A stretch of 64,000 bases of DNA from Octopus bimaculoides (taxonomy: Eukaryota). The notes beneath the pieces were generated by a model. That model was not told the origin of the DNA. It saw nothing but the letters and a program-made list of their open reading frames with translations, and ran no database searches. Both the position numbers and the translations under genes were made by a program. Where the stretch lies: the NCBI RefSeq assembly GCF_001194135.2, contig NC_068983.1, forward strand, positions 118,818,431-118,882,430, read 5' to 3'. Positions 4,022 to 59,943 of the stretch are shown one piece after another (position 1 is the first letter of the stretch; the number at the start of each line of letters is the position of its first letter).

Positions 4022-7000
4022 TACCATGAAACTGAATAAAGTTTTTAGTTTAGTTCTATACAATCCCTAGCATCATTACTGCATTCAATAAAATTGAAAA
4101 TAATACTTAGTATTTTAGTTTTCCTAGATGTAACTAACTCCAAGAGGTTAAATCTGTGAATGTGACACAGCTTATACATATATGCATGTGTAAATGTAAA
4201 CACCCCGCTTCCCTTCGTATATATATAGTTATATATATATATATATATATATATATTCATATATCAATGTAATGTAAATAAAAAGTAACATTAAAACGAC
4301 TGGGAAATAACACTACTATGAATAAGGTGTTAGTTTAATGTTTAAATGGATGGAAAAGAATTTCTTTGAGATTCAGATGTACATTATATATTATGGAGCT
4401 GTTGGGAGAGGTACGTGTACAGAATGAAGGTCTTTGTTCCCTGTTTGCAGAAAAAAGTGGAGCATGGAAATGCTAACAGAAGTGATTGTTTAATGAAGAG
4501 ACTGTATGGAGAAAAGGGAGAGAGAGAAATGGGGAAGGCAAACTAATTCCAAATTGGGAACTTATTACATTTAATGTTTATCGACAACTTACTTCCGACT
4601 TTATTTTTTCACTTAACTACTAACGAAACCTTGCAAAAACAGATGAGATTACATCTTCAGGTTAGATCTAATGATGCAATAAAATAAAGTGTTCCCTTTA
4701 GATGTCTAAAGATTTGTCTATAGTAAATTTGAACTCGCTAACCATGTACCCGTAGTTCAATATCTTATCGATTCGGTTCTTTTTCTCCTTATATGGAAAA
4801 CAATTGAGTATGTACAGCATATTGTAGAGACAGGATAGTAACTAATTAAGTTGTCTAATATAAAGCGTTTACACAATATGAATATTGAATACAATAACGA
4901 TTATGAAAACCGTGTTTTAGTTATCCACCTCACCCCTTCTCCCCACACGCACAAAAAGAAAGGATCAAAGGCAAAGTTGACCTCAGTGAGACTCTGAGTT
5001 TAGGTTGTGAAGAACCAGAGTAAATCCCGATCGAATTCTATCTAACATTTAAACGGTGCTGCCATCTCGTCTCCTTCCTTTCCTATAAACAATACAAGTA
5101 AAAAAGCAAAGGAGTAAAACAATAACAAAGTATAAATAATAACAAGCAAATAAAGTAGCACTTTTCTCCCTGGGAAATACAGAACTCCATATCTTTCCAA
5201 TTTTCAAGTGAGAATTATAGATGAGAAAGTCAATGAGTCAGTGCCTCTTGTACTGTTACCAACACTTGTCACTGTCTCTCCCTATGTAGTTGTACGTATT
5301 ACCACATCTTTGTAAAATTGACTAGTACTTGTTAGCTGTCATTCTAATCTTGAGATGTATTAGCTCCGTTAAGTAAATTTGCTTGAGATATACTATATAA
5401 AAGAAAAAAAAACTTCTGTTGTACACAATAGATTATCAGAAGTATAATCATTACAAGATATAACAAATATCTTATTATCAGCATTAACTCAACTATCACA
5501 TACTTTCAAATCCTACGTTAAATTTCGTTTACCTTTAACGCTTGAGTGTAATTTCTGCGAGTCAAGAGACTAACATATATCTCATAAATTCTTTTTCTCT
5601 TCATCACTCTCGCTGGCATATGGGACAGCAGTTTAAATATTTCCGTGTCAAAAAAGTATTACACAACAAATATGTTACTCTGATCAAAGATCGTCGAGAT
5701 TTTGATGACACAAAGAAAACTATATTTGTCGAGAATTCCGGGAAAAAAAAATCTGTTAAAAGTAGAATCAAACTGAAATGTCATTTCAGTGCAGGAAAAT
5801 AGCACGACAGTTAAATTTAGAGAAAGGAAATATAATAATTTATAATAGTTGTAAGTAAGGGAGTGTTTCATCAAAGGAAGAATTAGGATTGGGTGACTTT
5901 AAAAAAAATACTTGTCACCGAAGAAAAATATAATGAGTAACTCAGAACACGATCATTACTGGAACTTCCAGTATAAACATGATAAAGTACTTGAACCTGT
6001 CAGGCAAATTGGTAAACCAAGTGTTGTGTAGTTAAAGAGAATTCCAAAGTAAACCACTCTTTTAAGGTACAGTTTAGATAATTTCGTTTTCTGTACTGAA
6101 GCAGAAGTTCACTTCCAAAGAACTATGGCTCTCTTCGTTTATTAGGAGTAGAAACTATTGAAAATATTGTGTTTTCTGTAAAAACACAATTGATACGTTT
6201 TGTGTTATTAAAATTTTCGTAGAAATCTTAGAACAAAACCTATCTTAAAACACATTTTTTTTCTAACTTTGCCTCCTCAGAAATTCTATTTTTAACCGTT
6301 AAATACTTTACGGTTATAAAGTAGTAGGCGGCCTCCGTCGGAAGAGGAAAGTAGGGGTTGTGTTTGTTTGATGACGTTCGGTAGCTACAGAGCTGAAAAA
6401 GTCAATAATTCATGAAATAGAGGGCAGTTCTGTTGTGTTATATTTCTCAGAACTGGGGGTGTATGTAATGTAATCGACGTTTATAACGATGAAGAATATG
6501 TTTTAAAAGTCCTTATTTTACTTTTTATCTGGTTCACATATTTTTTTTTTTACAATCTCATCAAATAAATAATTTTGTTAGTTTATTGCTTCTACTTACT
6601 GTTTCAATCCCACGTGGTATCTGATGGCTTAATAGAAAATAAACTTAGCGCAGCTCTGGAGCATATAAGTAAAACAAAGTGAATGGATCTCCTTTGGTTT
6701 CGACGATGAGTATGCCGGTTATTGGATCAACTGAACTACCTGCTCATTGTAATAACGAGTAAGTGGCTGAGTAATTCCACAGACATTTGTACTCATAACG
6801 TAATGTTAAAATTAAATCAACGTGACACACTTTGTGATAGGTGGCTCCTTGAACGACAGGTACAGTCCATCCAATGGACTTTTATACAGCTTTCATCTAC
6901 CCAATTTCAGTCACAAAGTTTGACTTAACCCAGGATTGTGGTAGAAGAGTTTTACTCAAGATGTCATGTAAAAAGATCGAACTAGAGATCTCAAGATTGC

Positions 7001-13505: not shown

Positions 13506-13708
13506 GAATTCTTTTCTACTTTAGGCACAAGGCCCGAAATTTTGAGGGGGAGGAGCCAGTCGATTAGATCGAACCCAGCACGCAACTGGTACTTAATTTG
13601 TCGACCCGAAAGGATGAAAGGCAAAATCGACCTCTGCGGAATTTGAACTGAGAACGTAAAGACAGACGAAATACCGCTAAGCATTTCACCCGGCGTGCTA
13701 ACTTTTCT
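13506..13708 (-). mobile_element. SINE family A copy (5' truncated)
   Basis: High similarity to the reverse complement of other family A copies. Confidence 0.9.
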
Positions 13709-18649: not shown

Positions 18650-19075
18650 TGTAAAGAAAAAAGTTTTGAATGGTACAACAATGCACTATAATACAAAACA
18701 TGGACTATATACTTGTTGTAATTTAGTTATCTATAGTCCGATGATATTTCGGAATACAATTCCTTCTTCAGATCTTCTTAGATGGAGTCTCTGCTATCAA
18801 CTGTTTACTAACGGCTTTTCTTTTCTTTTCCCGGAAGTGTCGCAGTAGTAGTCCTACGAAGCTCCTTCCGGAATTCCTCATGAGAAGTGCGTGAGGTCGG
18901 CTATGCTTCAGTCTCGTGTGTGTTGGTATATCTGTAGCGCTGCTTCTAAGTTATGTGTTATACGTGCAGCTTCTCTTTTTTTTTGTTATAAACAATACAT
19001 GAGCATGTTATTAAGAATGAACCTACACACGTTCAGATGTAGCTAAATAATGTATTGATTACCAATCTCCAGCCT
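18650..19075 (-). mobile_element. Penelope-like element 3' remnant
   Basis: Minus-strand EAARITHNLEAALQIYQH resembles the GIY-YIG C-terminal LEAxxI motif and is followed by a hammerhead motif. Confidence 0.4.
18729..18783 (-). ncRNA. Minimal type I hammerhead ribozyme motif
   Basis: Minus strand: AUCUA-agaa-GAU CUGAAGA A GGAAU ugu AUUCC GAAA UAU C AUC-ggacua-UAGAU. Core boxes, 5-bp stem II, palindromic AUAU stem III and a split stem I are all present. Confidence 0.7.
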
Positions 19076-23289: not shown

Positions 23290-24115
23290 CAACATTTTGT
23301 ATTGTTAGTTGTATTCCAGAATAGTTATATCAGCGGCAGTGCCACGTGGATATTTTTCCTCTCCTTATTACTAGAACTGCACATTTATCTATTCTAACCT
23401 CCATACCAATCGCATTACTCACAACTCTAACTGTCTCGACCAAGGAATACAAAGCTTTCTAACTTTGGTAAATAATTTCATGTCATCCATAAACAAGAGA
23501 TGGTTTATTTTCTCACCCCTGCTAAATACGTGAAATGATTTAGCTTTTCGCATGAGAGGGATAAGAGCCACCTCGAATAGTAGTGGTGAGAGTGATCTTT
23601 GGAATATTTTTTTCCACTCTAGGCACAAGGCCTGAAATTTTGAGGGAGGGAGCCAGTCGATTACATCGACTCCAGTACGAAACTGGTACTTAATTTATCG
23701 ATCCCGAAAGGATGAATGCCAAAGTCGACCTCACCGGAATTTGAACTCAGAACATAAAGACAGACGAAACACCGCTAAGCATTTCGCCCGGCCTGCTAAC
23801 GTTTCTGCCAGCTCACCGCCTTATCACTTTGGAATATTACCTTACTAATGCTGGCTTCATCTAACTTACCTTGACCTGATGATAGTACGGTTCTCCATTT
23901 TGACATACTGTTTTGTAAGAGCTAGACGATATTCTTAGCTATCTCAAATATAATGAAGCATCCTAGGATGGATGAGTGTGGCACACTCCTATATGCCTCT
24001 TCCTTCTTTTGAGGTTGCAGAAGACTTGATCTATACATCATAGGTCATTTGTCCTTTCAGAATATTTTCTATCTCTTCTTTGTTCTTCTGGCAGTAGATC
24101 TCCTTCCTCAAAATA

Positions 24116-24607: not shown

Positions 24608-25350
24608 CACAAACCTTGTACCAAAATTTGAAGCCACTATTACTAAGGCGGCCAGCTGGAAGAATCGTTAACGCGCTGGACAAAGTGCTTAGCAGTATTT
24701 CACCCGTTTGCTACGTTCTGAGTTCAAATTCTGCCGAGGTCGATTTTACTATTCATCCTTTTCGGGTCGATAAAATAAGTATCAGTTGAACATTGGGGGT
24801 CGATGTAAACAACACATTGCCTCCCCCAAAATGGCTGTCCTTGTGGCGAAATTTGAAACCATTATTATTATTTTTAAGGTGGCGAGCTAGGAGAATCATT
24901 AGCATGCCGGGCGAAATGCTTAGCGATATTTTGTCCGAGCCTGTGCTCTGAGTTGAAATACCGCCGGGGTCGATAAATTAAGCACCAGTTACGCACTAAA
25001 GTCAATGTAATCGACTAGTCCCCGCCCCCAAATTTCAGGCCTTGTGCCTATAGAAGAAAAGATCATTGTTATTATTAAGGCGGCGAGCTGGCAAGATCGC
25101 TCGCACGCCAGGCGAAATGCACAGCAGAATTTCGTCTGGCTTCGCGCTCTGAGTACAAATGCCGCCGGGGTCGACTTTGTCGTTTATCTTTGGTCGATAA
25201 AACCAGTATCATTTGAATACTGATGTAATTGACTTATCTTCCTACAACCGAAAAAGAAAATTTTAGGGTTTGTGCCTATAGCAGAAAGGATTATTATTAT
25301 TATTAAGGTGACATACTAGGAGAATTGCTAGCATGCCGGGCAAAATGCTT
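24608..25350 (+). mobile_element. Head-to-tail SINE family A array (tail fragment, copies at ~24645, ~24877, ~25077, truncated head ~25304)
   Basis: Repeated TAAGG(C/T)GGCGAGCT heads, each following a TTATTAT tail. Confidence 0.9.
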
Positions 25351-34586: not shown

Positions 34587-34854
34587 TCACTCTTTTACTT
34601 GTTTCTGTAACTTTTACTGCGGCCATGGTGGAGCACCGCCTTAAAGAGTTTTAGTTGAAGAAATCGACCCCAAGGCTTACTTTTGCAGGCCTAGTATTAT
34701 TCTACTAGTCTCTTTTATCGAACCGCTAAGTTCGGGGACACAACCACACTAACATCGGTTGTCAAGCGATGGCAGGGTAAGAAACACACGGGACTGAACC
34801 CAGAACCATGTGGTTGTGAAACAAGCGTCTTACCACACAGGAACGCTTGCGCCT
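34587..34854 (-). mobile_element. tRNA-derived SINE family C (degenerate, deleted)
   Basis: GGGACTGAACCCAGAACCATGTGGTTG...TTACCACACAG is the reverse complement of the head seen at 41007. Confidence 0.75.
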
Positions 34855-39397: not shown

Positions 39398-40060
39398 AAA
39401 GGCGGTGAGCTGGCAAAAACGTTAGCACGCCGGGCGAAATGCTTAGTGGTATTTCATCCGTCTTTACGTTCTGAGTTCAAATTTCGCCGAGGTCAACTTT
39501 GCCTTTCTTTCTTTCGGGGTCGATTAAATAAGTACCGGTTTCGCACTGGGGTCGATGTAATCGACTTAATCTGTTTGTCTGTCCTTGTTTGTCCCCTCTA
39601 TGTTTAGCCCCTTGTGGGCAATAAAGAAATAAGAAACGTCAACACACCGGGCGAAATGCTTAGTGGCATTTCATCCGTCTTCGTGTTCTGAGTTCAAATT
39701 CCGCCGTGGTCGACTTTGCCTTTCATCCTTTCACGGTCGATGAAATAAGTATCAGTTGTGCACTGGGATCGATCTAATCGACCTATCCCCACCCCCGAAA
39801 TTGCCGGCTTTGTGCCAAAATTTGAGATCATTTACGTCTCAAAAGTAGCGAGCTGGCAGAGCTTTTAGCACGCCGGTCAAAATGCTTAGCAGTATTTCTT
39901 TCGGTTTCACATTCTGAGTTCAAATCCCGGCGAGGTCAACTTTTCCTTTCATTCTTTCGGAATTGATGAAATGAAGTACCAGTCAAGTTCTGGAGTCAAT
40001 GTAAGCAACTAACGCCCTCCTCCTGAAATCGATGGATTTGTGACAAAACTTGAAACCGTC
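39398..40060 (+). mobile_element. Three tandem SINE family A units (first with an alternative 3' tail)
   Basis: Units start ~39398, ~39632 (headless) and ~39841; 14-mer ATTTACGTC(A/T)CAAA is duplicated at 39387 and 39830. Confidence 0.88.
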
Positions 40061-40413
40061 ATGTAGATTTTATGCATCTTTACTACTTTTTTCTTCTCAA
40101 TTATCTTCGTATCACAGTTTCAAGGATGTCTGAATCTTCCACCCAGAAAGCATTCTGCAAAGTTATCTTAACAATCTAAAAGGTCAATTAAATAAAATAC
40201 TAGTGAAGTACTGTGTGGTCGATGGTATCAACTATACACTCTCTTCAAATTAACTAGTCTCGCGCCTAAATCAAAAACACTTATGATATATTAAGGTTGA
40301 AAATAGCAACTGATTTGAAACTTGAAGCAAAAGAAATAATGCAAAGGTAACATCATCAAGTGATGTAGAAGAGAAGATATTCTACATGATCTTCTCAGCA
40401 TAAAACCAAATCA

Positions 40414-40527
<114 letters not shown>

Positions 40528-40528
40528 C

Positions 40529-40911
40529 TGTGACAATTATTCGGTAGCCATGATAAAACTCCGAGTTTCGGATGTCGGGGCGGACACCCACGCCGCCATC
40601 TCTTCAGTTATCTGGCCATCGAAAAAATTCTATGAAAATGACCGTTAAACGAAGGGAAATTACTGTGTGGGGTACGCATGTGTATGTATGTACTTGTGCG
40701 CTTACGCGAATACTATGAACATTTTTACTCCCTTACCTTTACTCCTTCCCCTCACATAGCGGTCATTCTAATAGCTCTTTTGTCTTAATAACGGTCAATC
40801 ATACAGGAATTTCCCTTTGTTTAACCGTCATTTTCATAGCATTTTTTCGATGGCCAGATAACTGAAGAAATGGCAGCGTGGGTTTCCGCCCCGACATCCG
40901 ACATTGTCACA
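40529..40911. mobile_element. Fold-back element with ~102-bp inverted arms and TGTGACAAT...ATTGTCACA termini
   Basis: 40568-40669 versus the reverse complement of 40800-40901: 8 mismatches in 102 nt by manual count; terminal 9-mers inverted; flanks TATC/TATT. Confidence 0.85.
40545..40618 (-). ncRNA. Type I hammerhead ribozyme, apparently complete
   Basis: Minus strand: UGGCCAGAUAA CUGAAGA [GAUGGCGG-cgugggugu-CCGCcccgaCAUCC] GAAA CUCGGAG U U UUAUC(A)UGGCUA. 11-bp stem I with one bulge, conserved core, branched stem II, 3-bp stem III. Confidence 0.8.
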
Positions 40912-41006
40912 TATTATTTACAGATAAATTCCTCTATTTACATAATATCGAGGTCTCTTTCTTTCTTTTGTTGTCTTACCCTTTCTATCAATATATATAT
41001 ATATTA

Positions 41007-41246
41007 TAGGCGTAGGAGTGGCTGTGTGGTAAGTAGCTTGCTTACTAACCACATGGTTCCGGGTTCAGTCCCACTACGTGGCACCTTGGGCAAGTGTCTT
41101 CTACTATAGCCTCGGGCCGACCAAAGCCTTGTGAGTGGATTTGGTAGACGGAAACTGAAAGAAGTCCGTCGTATATATGTGTATATATGTATGTGTGTGT
41201 ATATGTTTGCGTGTCTGTGTTTGTCCCCCCAACATCGCTTGACAAC
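41007..41246 (+). mobile_element. tRNA-derived SINE family C (CORE-like body, TA/TG-rich segment)
   Basis: A box TGGCTGTGTGG, B box GGTTCAGTCCC, GGCACCTTGGGCAAGTGTCTTCTAC; runs into a gap. Confidence 0.88.
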
Positions 41247-41885
41247 NNNNNNNNNNNNNNNNNNNNNNNNNNNNNNNNNNNNNNNNNNNNNNNNNNNNNN
41301 NNNNNNNNNNNNNNNNNNNNNNNNNNNNNNNNNNNNNNNNNNNNNNNNNNNNNNNNNNNNNNNNNNNNNNNNNNNNNNNNNNNNNNNNNNNNNNNNNNNN
41401 NNNNNNNNNNNNNNNNNNNNNNNNNNNNNNNNNNNNNNNNNNNNNNNNNNNNNNNNNNNNNNNNNNNNNNNNNNNNNNNNNNNNNNNNNNNNNNNNNNNN
41501 NNNNNNNNNNNNNNNNNNNNNNNNNNNNNNNNNNNNNNNNNNNNNNNNNNNNNNNNNNNNNNNNNNNNNNNNNNNNNNNNNNNNNNNNNNNNNNNNNNNN
41601 NNNNNNNNNNNNNNNNNNNNNNNNNNNNNNNNNNNNNNNNNNNNNNNNNNNNNNNNNNNNNNNNNNNNNNNNNNNNNNNNNNNNNNNNNNNNNNNNNNNN
41701 NNNNNNNNNNNNNNNNNNNNNNNNNNNNNNNNNNNNNNNNNNNNNNNNNNNNNNNNNNNNNNNNNNNNNNNNNNNNNNNNNNNNNNNNNNNNNNNNNNNN
41801 NNNNTTTGTGTACATTTAAACTTAATAAAATATTATTTTACAGAATAATAGAATTAAAATTTCTTTGATTAAAACCTTTTCTAAC

Positions 41886-44294: not shown

Positions 44295-44488
44295 TAAGGC
44301 GGCAAGCTGACAGAATCGTTAGCATGTCGGGCGAAATGCTTAGTGGCATTTCGTCCGTCTTTACGTTCTGAGTTCAAATTCTGCCGTGTTCGACTTTACC
44401 ATTCATCCTTACGTGGTCGATAAAATAAGTACCAGTCGAATTACCCACTCTCTCAAAGTTGCAGGCCTTGTACCAAACTTTGAAATCA
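44295..44488 (+). mobile_element. SINE family A copy
   Basis: TAAGGCGGCAAGCTGACAGAATCG head, B box GAGTTCAAATTC, and tail. Confidence 0.88.
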
Positions 44489-52665: not shown

Positions 52666-52799
52666 TCAGGAGTGTCTGTGTGGCAAGTAACTTGCTTACC
52701 AACCACATGACACCTTGAGCAAATGTCTTCCGCTATAGCCTTGGGCTGACCAAAGCCTTGTGAGTGGATTTGGTAGACAGAAACTCAAAGAAATTCGCC

Positions 52800-52842
<43 letters not shown>

Positions 52843-59729: not shown

Positions 59730-59943
59730 TTTTCTGCTCTAGGTACAAGGCCCGAAATTTCTGGAGCGGGAGTCAGTCGATTAGATCGACCTCAGTACGC
59801 AACTGGTACTTAATTTATCGAGCCCGAAAGGATGAAAGGCAAAGTCGACCTCAGCGGAATTTGAACTCAAAACGTAAAAACAGACGAAATACCGCTAAGC
59901 ATTTCGTCAGGCGTGCAAACGTTTCTGCCAGTTCACCGCCTTA
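59730..59943 (-). mobile_element. Full-length SINE family A with 15-bp TSD
   Basis: GAATAAGAGATATTA (59715-59729) and GAATGAGAGATATTA (59944-59958). Confidence 0.92.

What the first reader, a model, noticed from the sequence alone, without database searches (positions are those of the whole stretch)
40545..40618. Apparently complete hammerhead ribozyme forming the terminal repeat of a fold-back element
Seen on the minus strand: stem I UGGCCAGAUAA/UUAUC(A)UGGCUA (11 bp, one bulge, one G-U), CUGAAGA at 40607-40601 and GAAA at 40569-40566. Stem II is branched (GAUG/CAUC plus GCGG/CCGC), stem III is ACU/AGU with a CGG loop, and the GUU triplet predicts cleavage between 40557 and 40556. Established: type I hammerheads occur in Penelope-like terminal repeats and in retrozymes. 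GUU and the weak stem III may slow cleavage or require a dimer. Activity is inference.
Basis: partly seen in the sequence, partly recalled or inferred. Interest (0 to 1): 0.85.

Follow-up and report, generated by a model that had tools for sequence, protein, structure and literature searches.

The report
Unvalidated hammerhead-like motif in fold-back repeat
One arm of a small 383-bp inverted-repeat element carries every sequence part of a type I hammerhead ribozyme, most likely a relic of a known kind of ribozyme-bearing retroelement, but no curated model, related copy or folding result confirms it and it is probably inactive at this locus.

Summary
They include the hammerhead (HHR) core CUGAAGA...GAAA, an 11-bp helix I, a 3-bp helix III and a GUU cleavage site.

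- Helix II is one interrupted hairpin, not a branch.
- An extra C (40570) sits between helix II and GAAA.
- Only the lower arm of the fold-back has the full motif. The upper arm lacks 29 nt that hold part of GAAA, helix III, the cleavage site and the 3' strand of helix I.

Against a real ribozyme:
- No Rfam hammerhead model matches, even at E<=10 on 96 nt.
- The minimum-energy fold is not a hammerhead.
- A full transcript would be locked in a 102-bp arm-arm duplex.
- I could retrieve no relatives, so covariation is untested.

For a real ribozyme:
- A matching descriptor hits random sequence about 0.004 times per window.
- The layout matches published truncated Penelope-like element (PLE) insertions: outward-facing motifs on opposite strands 255 nt apart, next to (AT)n, with a long bulged helix II and a palindromic helix III.

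Verdict: probably (about 50%) a decayed member of the known PLE or retrozyme hammerhead world. About one third: a chance look-alike in a MITE-like fold-back. Interest is low to moderate.

The parts
40545..40618 (-). Complete type I hammerhead-like motif. Helix I 5' strand 40618-40608; CUGAAGA 40607-40601; helix II hairpin 40600-40571; extra C 40570; GAAA 40569-40566; helix III 40566-40558; U17 at 40557; helix I 3' strand 40556-40545. The predicted cut lies between 40557 and 40556.
   Evidence: Read directly. It is the only hit of my descriptor in the window. With the core forced single-stranded, the best fold is exactly this three-way junction at -22.0 kcal/mol. No Rfam hammerhead match.
40529..40669 (-). 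Lower arm of the fold-back. This is the shorter copy, and it carries the full motif and the terminal ATTGTCACA (40537-40529).
   Evidence: Inverted repeat I1 (102 nt, 92%). The gapped alignment extends it to the terminus.
40538..40567 (-). About 29 nt present only in the lower arm: AACUCGGAGUUUUAUCAUGGCUACCGAAU. It supplies the last bases of GAAA, helix III, the cleavage site and the 3' strand of helix I. It is bounded by direct CCGA repeats.
   Evidence: The alignment shows gaps of 24 + 5 nt in the upper arm. The CCGA...CCGA repeats were read and suggest a microhomology deletion in the upper arm (inference).
40800..40911 (+). Upper arm of the fold-back. It holds a truncated, outward-facing copy of the motif: helix I 5' strand 40851-40861, CUGAAGA 40862-40868, helix II, ending at CCGA 40898-40901. 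Position 10.1 is A instead of G, and one inner helix II pair is broken.
40670..40799 (.). Central 130 nt between the arms. It contains two further degenerate units of about 32 nt that match the sub-repeat found in the arms, so it reads as a continuation of the upper (longer) copy.
   Evidence: One search aligns units at 40842-40805, 40806-40774 and 40777-40736 (minus strand) with 40628-40665 (plus strand). In one search the only three exact TGACCGYTA matches in the 64-kb window are all inside the element (40639-40647 on +, 40757-40765 on -, 40789-40797 on -), and a one-mismatch copy lies at 40822-40830 on the minus strand.
40416..40527 (.). (AC)42(AT)14 microsatellite abutting the lower terminus. 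It is a possible insertion target.
   Evidence: Tandem Repeats Finder. PLEs prefer (TA)n and (CA)n targets (PMC8557442).

Best explanation
The locus is a 383-bp relic made of two head-to-head copies of the 3' end of one repeated element. The copies are truncated at their 5' ends and are 92% identical. The element lies next to an (AC)n(AT)n microsatellite.

The parent was most likely a Penelope-like retroelement (PLE) or one of its non-autonomous derivatives. It carried an atypical type I hammerhead near its 3' end, so the two ribozyme sequences face outward on opposite strands with their cores 255 nt apart. The lower copy still has every part. The upper copy lost about 29 nt between two CCGA repeats and has since picked up changes that break helix II.

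In the parent, the ribozyme would have cut multimeric transcripts after the GUU triplet. It probably worked as a dimer, in which two near-palindromic helix III segments pair with each other.

At this locus it is probably inactive:
- there is no second intact copy to dimerise with;
- helix III is populated only about 2% of the time;
- a read-through transcript would be locked into the arm-arm duplex.

Shown: the sequence anatomy, the fold-back, the indel, the statistics and the energies. Inferred: descent from a PLE, the direction of the indel, and any catalytic activity.
For: - All invariant core nucleotides and three helices sit in type I order.
- The motif is rare by chance: 0 of 400 random windows, 33 per Gb or about 0.004 per window, and 1.7 per Gb with the long helix I.
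- When the core is kept unpaired, the best fold is the hammerhead junction at -22.0 kcal/mol.
- Helix III, ACUC-G-GAGU, self-dimerises at -12.1 kcal/mol. Two copies with open cores fold at -57.9 kcal/mol, against 2 x -25.7 for two monomers.
- The fold-back and its 29-nt indel are documented.
- Published PLE hammerheads have a large helix II, bulged bases (one in the middle of helix II in Drosophila virilis), a conserved G10.1-C11.1 pair and a palindromic helix III. They also occur as pairs on opposite strands 100-700 bp apart, interpreted as truncated PLEs (PMC4209133).
- PLE insertions are heavily truncated at the 5' end, often have an adjacent inverted truncated copy that forms inverted repeats, carry the hammerhead near the 3' end and prefer microsatellite targets (PMC8557442).
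Against: - No Rfam hammerhead family matches, even at E<=10 on 96 nt.
- The minimum-energy fold pairs CUGA with UCGG. It lies 3.7 kcal/mol below the hammerhead fold and is no more stable than shuffles (z = -1.75).
- The helix III pair probability is 0.016.
- There is an extra C at the helix II / G12 junction. The unpaired base between positions 9 and 10.1 that is typical of PLE hammerheads is absent.
- GUU is a poor cleavage triplet (established NUH-rule knowledge, not tested here).
- The window holds no reverse transcriptase or GIY-YIG endonuclease reading frame and no other copy of the element.
- No relatives were found anywhere reachable, so there is no covariation evidence.
- The two arms differ as much inside the motif (3 changes in about 51 nt) as outside it (5 in about 51 nt), so there is no sign of selection.
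- The sub-terminal direct repeats suit a DNA transposon equally well.
Confidence: 0.5

Rival explanations
1. The motif is a chance look-alike. The element is a MITE-like or fold-back DNA transposon with long terminal inverted repeats (ends TGTGACAAT...ATTGTCACA) and sub-terminal repeats that would bind a transposase. One arm happens to contain a local hairpin whose internal loop reads CUGAAGA / GAAA. No ribozyme was ever involved.
For: - The arms are long and 92% complementary, and the DNA hairpin folds at -116.6 kcal/mol with z = -20.6.
- There are four TGACCGYTA sub-repeats, and the only exact copies in the window are inside the element. Three direct units of about 32 nt are aligned.
- No Rfam hammerhead hit.
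- The minimum-energy fold is not a hammerhead and its z-score is unremarkable.
- The random rate implies roughly 1-10 motifs of this quality, and more than 100 at descriptor level, in a genome of a few Gb. A scan of many windows would therefore meet some by chance.
- The extended pairing beyond helix I looks like an ordinary nested palindrome.
Against: - The per-window chance is only about 0.004, or about 0.0002 with the long helix I.
- Given a hairpin with such an internal loop, the loop would have to match about 13 specified bases in exact register.
- No clear target-site duplication can be read in the TA-rich flanks.
- There are no other copies in 64 kb, while a SINE-like repeat has about 20.
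- The outward-facing opposite-strand arrangement next to a microsatellite is the published signature of truncated PLEs.
Confidence: 0.33
2. The lower-arm motif is an active hammerhead at this locus. A minus-strand transcript cuts itself after U40557, as a monomer or by pairing with transcripts from other copies. This would give 5'-OH ends at 40556 and might feed a circular-RNA (retrozyme-like) pathway.
For: - The core is intact and helix I is long and stable at 11 bp.
- The hammerhead fold is only 3.7 kcal/mol above the minimum-energy fold, and that comparison ignores tertiary contacts.
- Dimerisation through helix III is favourable.
- Animal type I hammerheads with a weak helix III are known to work as dimers (PMC7229834).
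Against: - There is no tandem or direct second copy, so no unit-length RNA could be released.
- The partner arm is truncated.
- A transcript of the whole element folds into the arm-arm duplex at -200.4 kcal/mol.
- A 171-nt transcript that starts in the centre does not form the hammerhead either.
- GUU and the extra C are expected to slow catalysis (knowledge and inference).
- Even authentic PLE hammerheads cleave poorly in vitro (PMC4209133).
Confidence: 0.1
3. What matters functionally is the long hairpin, not the ribozyme-like core. If the near-perfect 102-bp inverted repeat is transcribed, it would act as a hairpin-RNA or small-RNA precursor.
For: The RNA hairpin folds at -200.4 kcal/mol with z = -19.
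Against: There is no match to any Rfam microRNA or other family outside the flanking microsatellite and no evidence of expression. Any young inverted duplication folds this way.
Confidence: 0.05

Closest known systems
Hammerhead variants in the pseudo-LTRs of Penelope-like elements (Cervera & de la Pena 2014, PMC4209133), including the Drosophila virilis variant
   Same: - Type I topology with an intact CUGANGA / GAAA core and a G10.1-C11.1 pair.
- Helix II longer than the canonical 4 bp and carrying a bulged base.
- A short, near-palindromic helix III that suggests action as a dimer.
- Motifs on opposite strands a few hundred bp apart, interpreted as truncated elements.
- Position near the 3' end of the unit and next to a microsatellite (PMC8557442).
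- Curated models and descriptors tend to miss such variants.
   Different: - There is no unpaired base between positions 9 and 10.1. The extra base is on the 3' strand of helix II instead.
- Helix I is long (11 bp), against 2-5 bp in those variants.
- Helix III is a true 3-bp hairpin.
- The cleavage triplet is GUU.
- No RT or GIY-YIG reading frame and no family of copies could be shown here.
Canonical metazoan type I hammerheads in non-LTR retrozymes and satellite repeats (Schistosoma, newt and axolotl, mussel, coral; PMC7229834); Rfam Hammerhead_1
   Same: Same core, type I topology, a weak helix III that needs a dimer, and residence in a short AT-rich repeat of a few hundred bp.
   Different: - The element is not in head-to-tail tandem repeats. 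Its copies are inverted.
- Helix II is 8 bp and interrupted, not 4 bp plus a loop.
- No recognisable loop 1 / loop 2 contact motif.
- It fails the Rfam models, whereas 235 Hammerhead_1 hits were reported in a cephalopod genome (PMC6962438).
Fold-back or MITE-type DNA transposons with long terminal inverted repeats built partly of sub-repeats
   Same: Long inverted arms (at least 115 nt, 92%), arms of unequal length because they hold different numbers of about 32-nt sub-repeats, small overall size, and no coding capacity.
   Different: No readable target-site duplication, no other copies in the window, and no such element is known to carry a hammerhead motif (literature search).

Membership tests
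Hammerhead ribozyme | Invariant core: C3 U4 G5 A6 N7 G8 A9, G12 A13 A14, A15.1-U16.1 pair, H17 (not G) | tested here: met
   CUGAAGA 40607-40601, GAAA 40569-40566, U40558 and U40557, read.
Hammerhead ribozyme | Three helices that abut the core directly (type I: helix I open, helices II and III closed) | tested here: inconclusive
   Helix I is 11 bp, helix II is 4+4 bp and helix III is 3 bp. One extra C (40570) lies at the helix II / G12 junction. It can be drawn as a bulge at position 11.2. The descriptor hits only when one inserted base is allowed.
Hammerhead ribozyme | Match to a curated covariance model (the Rfam hammerhead families) | tested here: not met
   No hammerhead family is listed at gathering score, at E<=10 on 1.5 kb or at E<=10 on 96 nt.
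Hammerhead ribozyme | Core conserved and helices supported by compensatory changes among homologues | not testable with these tools
   There is no homologue in the window, in metagenome, viral or prokaryotic collections or by the protein route. The only paralogue, the upper arm, is truncated, and its two helix II changes are not compensated.
Hammerhead ribozyme | Mg2+-dependent self-cleavage 3' of position 17, giving 2',3'-cyclic phosphate and 5'-OH ends | not testable with these tools
   This needs a bench assay.
Hammerhead ribozyme | The active fold is thermodynamically accessible | tested here: inconclusive
   The hammerhead fold is at -22.0 kcal/mol and the minimum-energy fold at -25.7. 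Helix III probability is 0.016. The dimer is favoured. The arm-arm duplex dominates in a full transcript.
Penelope-like element hammerhead | Lies in the terminal repeat of an element that encodes a reverse transcriptase plus a GIY-YIG endonuclease | tested here: not met
   No long reading frame lies near the element, and the ten cleanest ORFs in the window have no RT or GIY-YIG Pfam hit. Published data say most genomic copies are truncated and lack the ORF, so this lowers the claim of membership without excluding descent from a PLE.
Penelope-like element hammerhead | Large helix II, G10.1-C11.1 pair, and palindromic positions 15.2-16.2 with loop 3 | tested here: met
   Helix II has 8 bp in total, G40600 can pair with C40571 or C40570, and helix III reads ACUC-G-GAGU.
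Penelope-like element hammerhead | [quoted passage not shown] | tested here: not met
   A40601 is followed directly by G40600, which pairs.
Penelope-like element hammerhead | Insertion anatomy: 5' truncation, an adjacent inverted truncated copy, and a microsatellite target | tested here: met
   The head-to-head copies measure about 141 and 242 nt, and (AT)14 abuts the lower end.
Metazoan non-LTR retrozyme | Head-to-tail tandem repeats of 170-400 bp, each with a type I hammerhead | tested here: not met
   There is no tandem array. The copies are inverted, and only one motif is complete.
MITE or fold-back DNA transposon | Terminal inverted repeats flanked by a target-site duplication, and many dispersed copies | tested here: inconclusive
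   The terminal inverted repeats are present. The TA-rich flanks make a target-site duplication unreadable. There is no second copy in the window, and the genome-wide copy number cannot be tested.

The most novel reading that the evidence does not exclude
The element is a genuine DNA-type fold-back transposon whose long terminal inverted repeats each encoded an outward-facing, functional hammerhead of a new structural variant (8-bp interrupted helix II with a 3'-strand bulge, 11-bp helix I, GUU site). That would tie self-cleaving ribozymes to a DNA transposon rather than to a retroelement.
Probability: 0.07. Interest if true: 0.65.

Novelty: new member of a known kind. Interest (0 to 1): 0.3.

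Why it matters
If the motif is real, it adds one atypical hammerhead that curated models miss to the large and already known population of ribozymes carried by animal retroelements. It would also show again that covariance-model screens undercount such variants. It would not change how these elements are thought to work. If it is a chance look-alike, it is a useful calibration point. A motif with a perfect core and three helices turns up about 0.004 times per 64-kb window of random sequence, so genome-wide scans that rely on reading alone will meet several. The only reading that would matter more is a ribozyme built into the inverted repeats of a DNA transposon. Nothing here favours that reading over the ordinary one.

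Tried and rejected
- **Rfam.** I searched the whole window at gathering score, then 40000-41500 and 40535-40630 at E<=10. Only microsatellite-driven microRNA noise and one weak ROSE_3 match appeared. No hammerhead family matched.
- **Relatives by DNA.** A 17-mer scan of metagenome contigs gave 100 loci and a scan of viral contigs gave 1. An 18-mer scan of prokaryotic genomes gave 27. BLAST shows all are bare seeds of at most 30 nt, so they are chance hits.
- **Relatives by protein.** I used a profile of the antisense ORF that is open in both arms. No candidate was found. Exact-product look-ups of two window ORFs returned nothing.
- **Other copies in the window.** blastn with word size 7 and nhmmer found none.
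- **Literature.** Searches for the sequence strings found nothing. A search for hammerheads in MITE inverted repeats found nothing relevant. The supplement of PMC8557442 is not held.
- **Other CUGANGA...GAAA sites in the window.** There are 12 against 5.2 expected. The sites at 6246-6280 and 18747-18771 on the minus strand lack convincing helices I and III, so I rejected them as chance.
- **Minimal PLE-type descriptor.** A descriptor with a palindromic segment and no helix III hairpin found nothing in the window.
- **tRNA-derived origin.** ARAGORN found no tRNA.
- **Assembly artefact.** I rejected this for the fold-back because the arms differ at 8% of positions and by a 29-nt indel.
- **Failed scripts.** Two ViennaRNA scripts crashed on an unbalanced structure string that I had written. 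The calculation was redone correctly.

Full report
**1. What is in the sequence**

On the minus strand, 40618-40545 reads UGGCCAGAUAA CUGAAGA GAUGGCGGCGUGGGUGUCCGCCCCGACAUC C GAAA CU CGG AG U U UUAUCAUGGCUA.
- CUGAAGA lies at 40607-40601 and GAAA at 40569-40566.
- Helix I has 11 bp, with A40551 bulged and one G-U pair.
- Helix III is ACU/AGU around a CGG loop.
- U40557 is position 17, so a cut would fall between 40557 and 40556.
- All invariant hammerhead core positions are present.

- Helix II is not branched. It is a single hairpin, GAUG+GCGG pairing with CCGC and CAUC, with a 5-nt bulge (CCCGA) on the 3' strand and a 9-nt loop.
- One extra C (40570) lies between CAUC and GAAA. Because two Cs are adjacent, G10.1 can pair with either. 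The extra base can therefore be drawn as a bulge one pair inside helix II, which leaves the G10.1-C11.1 / G12 junction intact. In the nearest-neighbour model this alternative costs 3.4 kcal/mol.

**2. Is it more than chance?**

I wrote a descriptor loose enough to accept this candidate. It required helix I >=5 bp, helix II >=4 bp enclosing up to about 36 nt, helix III >=3 bp with a loop of >=3 nt, at most one inserted base before GAAA, and a non-G at position 17.
- It finds only this site on either strand of the window.
- It finds none in 400 first-order Markov windows.
- It finds 20 in 600 Mb of composition-matched random sequence. That is 33 per Gb of single strand, or about 0.004 per window.
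- Requiring the 11-bp helix I leaves 1 hit in 600 Mb.

Within one window the motif is therefore unlikely to be chance. A genome of a few Gb would still hold roughly 1-10 chance motifs of full quality and more than 100 at descriptor level. If many windows were scanned, the statistic alone does not settle the matter.

**3. Tests that came out negative or neutral**
- No Rfam hammerhead family matches at gathering score, at E<=10 in 1.5 kb or at E<=10 when only 96 nt are searched.
- The 74-nt RNA has a minimum-energy fold in which CUGA pairs with UCGG. Its energy is -25.7 kcal/mol with z = -1.75, so it is no more stable than shuffles.
- When the core is forced single-stranded, the best structure is exactly the hammerhead three-way junction, at -22.0 kcal/mol. 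In the unconstrained ensemble, helix III pairs have probability 0.016.
- ACUC-G-GAGU is near-palindromic. The helix III segment self-dimerises at -12.1 kcal/mol, and two copies with open cores reach -57.9 kcal/mol against 2 x -25.7 for two monomers. This fits the dimeric mode described for animal type I hammerheads (PMC4209133, PMC7229834).
- A transcript of the whole element folds into the arm-arm duplex at -200.4 kcal/mol with z = -19. A 171-nt transcript that starts in the centre does not form the hammerhead either.

**4. The surrounding element**
- Arms 40568-40669 and 40800-40901 are 92% complementary.
- A gapped alignment shows that the inverted repeat resumes at ATTGTCACA (40537-40529 and 40903-40911). 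The element therefore spans about 40529-40911, or 383 bp.
- The lower arm has about 29 nt (40538-40567) that the upper arm lacks. These bases supply the last part of GAAA, helix III, the cleavage site and the 3' strand of helix I.
- The upper arm therefore carries only an outward-facing 5' two-thirds of the motif on the plus strand, with CUGAAGA at 40862-40868. Position 10.1 is A there and one inner helix II pair is broken.
- The extra segment is bounded by direct CCGA repeats. A microhomology deletion in the upper arm is thus the simpler history, and the ancestor probably had a full motif in both arms. This is inference, because there is no outgroup.
- The arms differ about as much inside the motif as outside it, so there is no trace of selection.
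- The centre is not random. The 9-mer TGACCGYTA has only three exact matches in 64 kb, and all lie inside the element. A fourth copy has one mismatch. Together they mark three degenerate direct units of about 32 nt on the minus strand, plus one inverted unit in the lower arm.
- The lower end abuts (AC)42(AT)14.
- There is no other copy of the element in the window.

**5. Relatives**

I could retrieve none.
- 17- and 18-mer scans of metagenome, viral and prokaryotic collections returned only chance seeds.
- A protein-route search with the antisense ORF that is open in both arms found nothing.
- Exact-product look-ups found nothing.
- Literature searches for the sequence found nothing.

None of the collections I could search by DNA is a eukaryotic genome collection. 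Covariation, which is the decisive computational test, therefore remains undone.

**6. Comparison with what is known**

Cervera and de la Pena (PMC4209133) describe the hammerheads of Penelope-like elements (PLEs) as type I motifs with these features:
- a helix II larger than usual;
- bulged bases, including one in the middle of helix II in Drosophila virilis;
- a conserved G10.1-C11.1 pair;
- a short palindromic helix III, implying action as a dimer;
- low activity in vitro;
- frequent occurrence as single motifs, or as pairs on opposite strands 100-700 bp apart, read as truncated elements.

Craig et al. (PMC8557442) describe PLE insertions as strongly truncated at the 5' end, often with an adjacent inverted truncated copy that forms inverted repeats. 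The hammerhead lies near the 3' end, and (TA)n and (CA)n microsatellites are preferred targets.

The present locus matches that anatomy point for point. It differs in four ways:
- it lacks the unpaired base between positions 9 and 10.1;
- helix I is long;
- the cleavage triplet is GUU;
- no RT or GIY-YIG reading frame lies nearby.

It is not a retrozyme in the strict sense, because it has no head-to-tail tandem. The long inverted arms with sub-repeats fit a MITE-like or fold-back DNA transposon equally well. In that case the motif would more likely be a coincidence.

**7. Verdict**
- About 0.5: a decayed relic of a ribozyme-bearing retroelement of the PLE or retrozyme world, complete in one arm and probably inactive here.
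- About 0.33: a chance look-alike inside a fold-back DNA element.
- About 0.1: a hammerhead that is active at this locus.
- About 0.05: only the hairpin matters.

The finding is a new member of a known kind at best. Interest is 0.3.

Noticed in passing
window 39400-40010, and about 18 further places (for example 2030-2651, 13558-13706, 23655-23821, 24646-25208, 44297-44436, 59775-59941): A SINE-like repeat of about 170 nt occurs about 20 times in the 64-kb window at 75-87% identity. Three copies lie side by side just upstream of the finding. From memory it resembles the abundant SINE of octopus genomes. I could not verify this, and ARAGORN finds no tRNA-like gene.
   Followed up: partly
window 41014-41204, 52668-52833, 34790-34854: A second interspersed repeat family lies directly beside the upper arm of the fold-back. 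The copies are 74-87% identical.
   Followed up: partly
whole window: This is a draft-quality assembly. It has 17 runs of N totalling 5621 bases, 37% G+C, and many long (AC)n, (AT)n and homopolymer-type microsatellites. The ten cleanest ORFs of at least 100 aa have no credible Pfam domain. The region looks intergenic or intronic and rich in repeats.
   Followed up: partly
window 18747-18771 (-) and 6246-6280 (-): Two other CUGANGA...GAAA stretches each have a short helix II-like hairpin. The first reads CUGAAGA-A-GGAAU-UGU-AUUCC-GAAA. Neither has a convincing helix I or helix III, so I judged both to be chance.
   Followed up: yes
window 40572-40718 (+) and 40799-40897 (-): The strand antisense to the motif keeps an open frame of 32-48 codons in both arms (MSGR.PT.P.LQLSGHRKN.MKMTVK.REI). 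No relatives were found. It is probably a by-product of the inverted duplication.
   Followed up: yes
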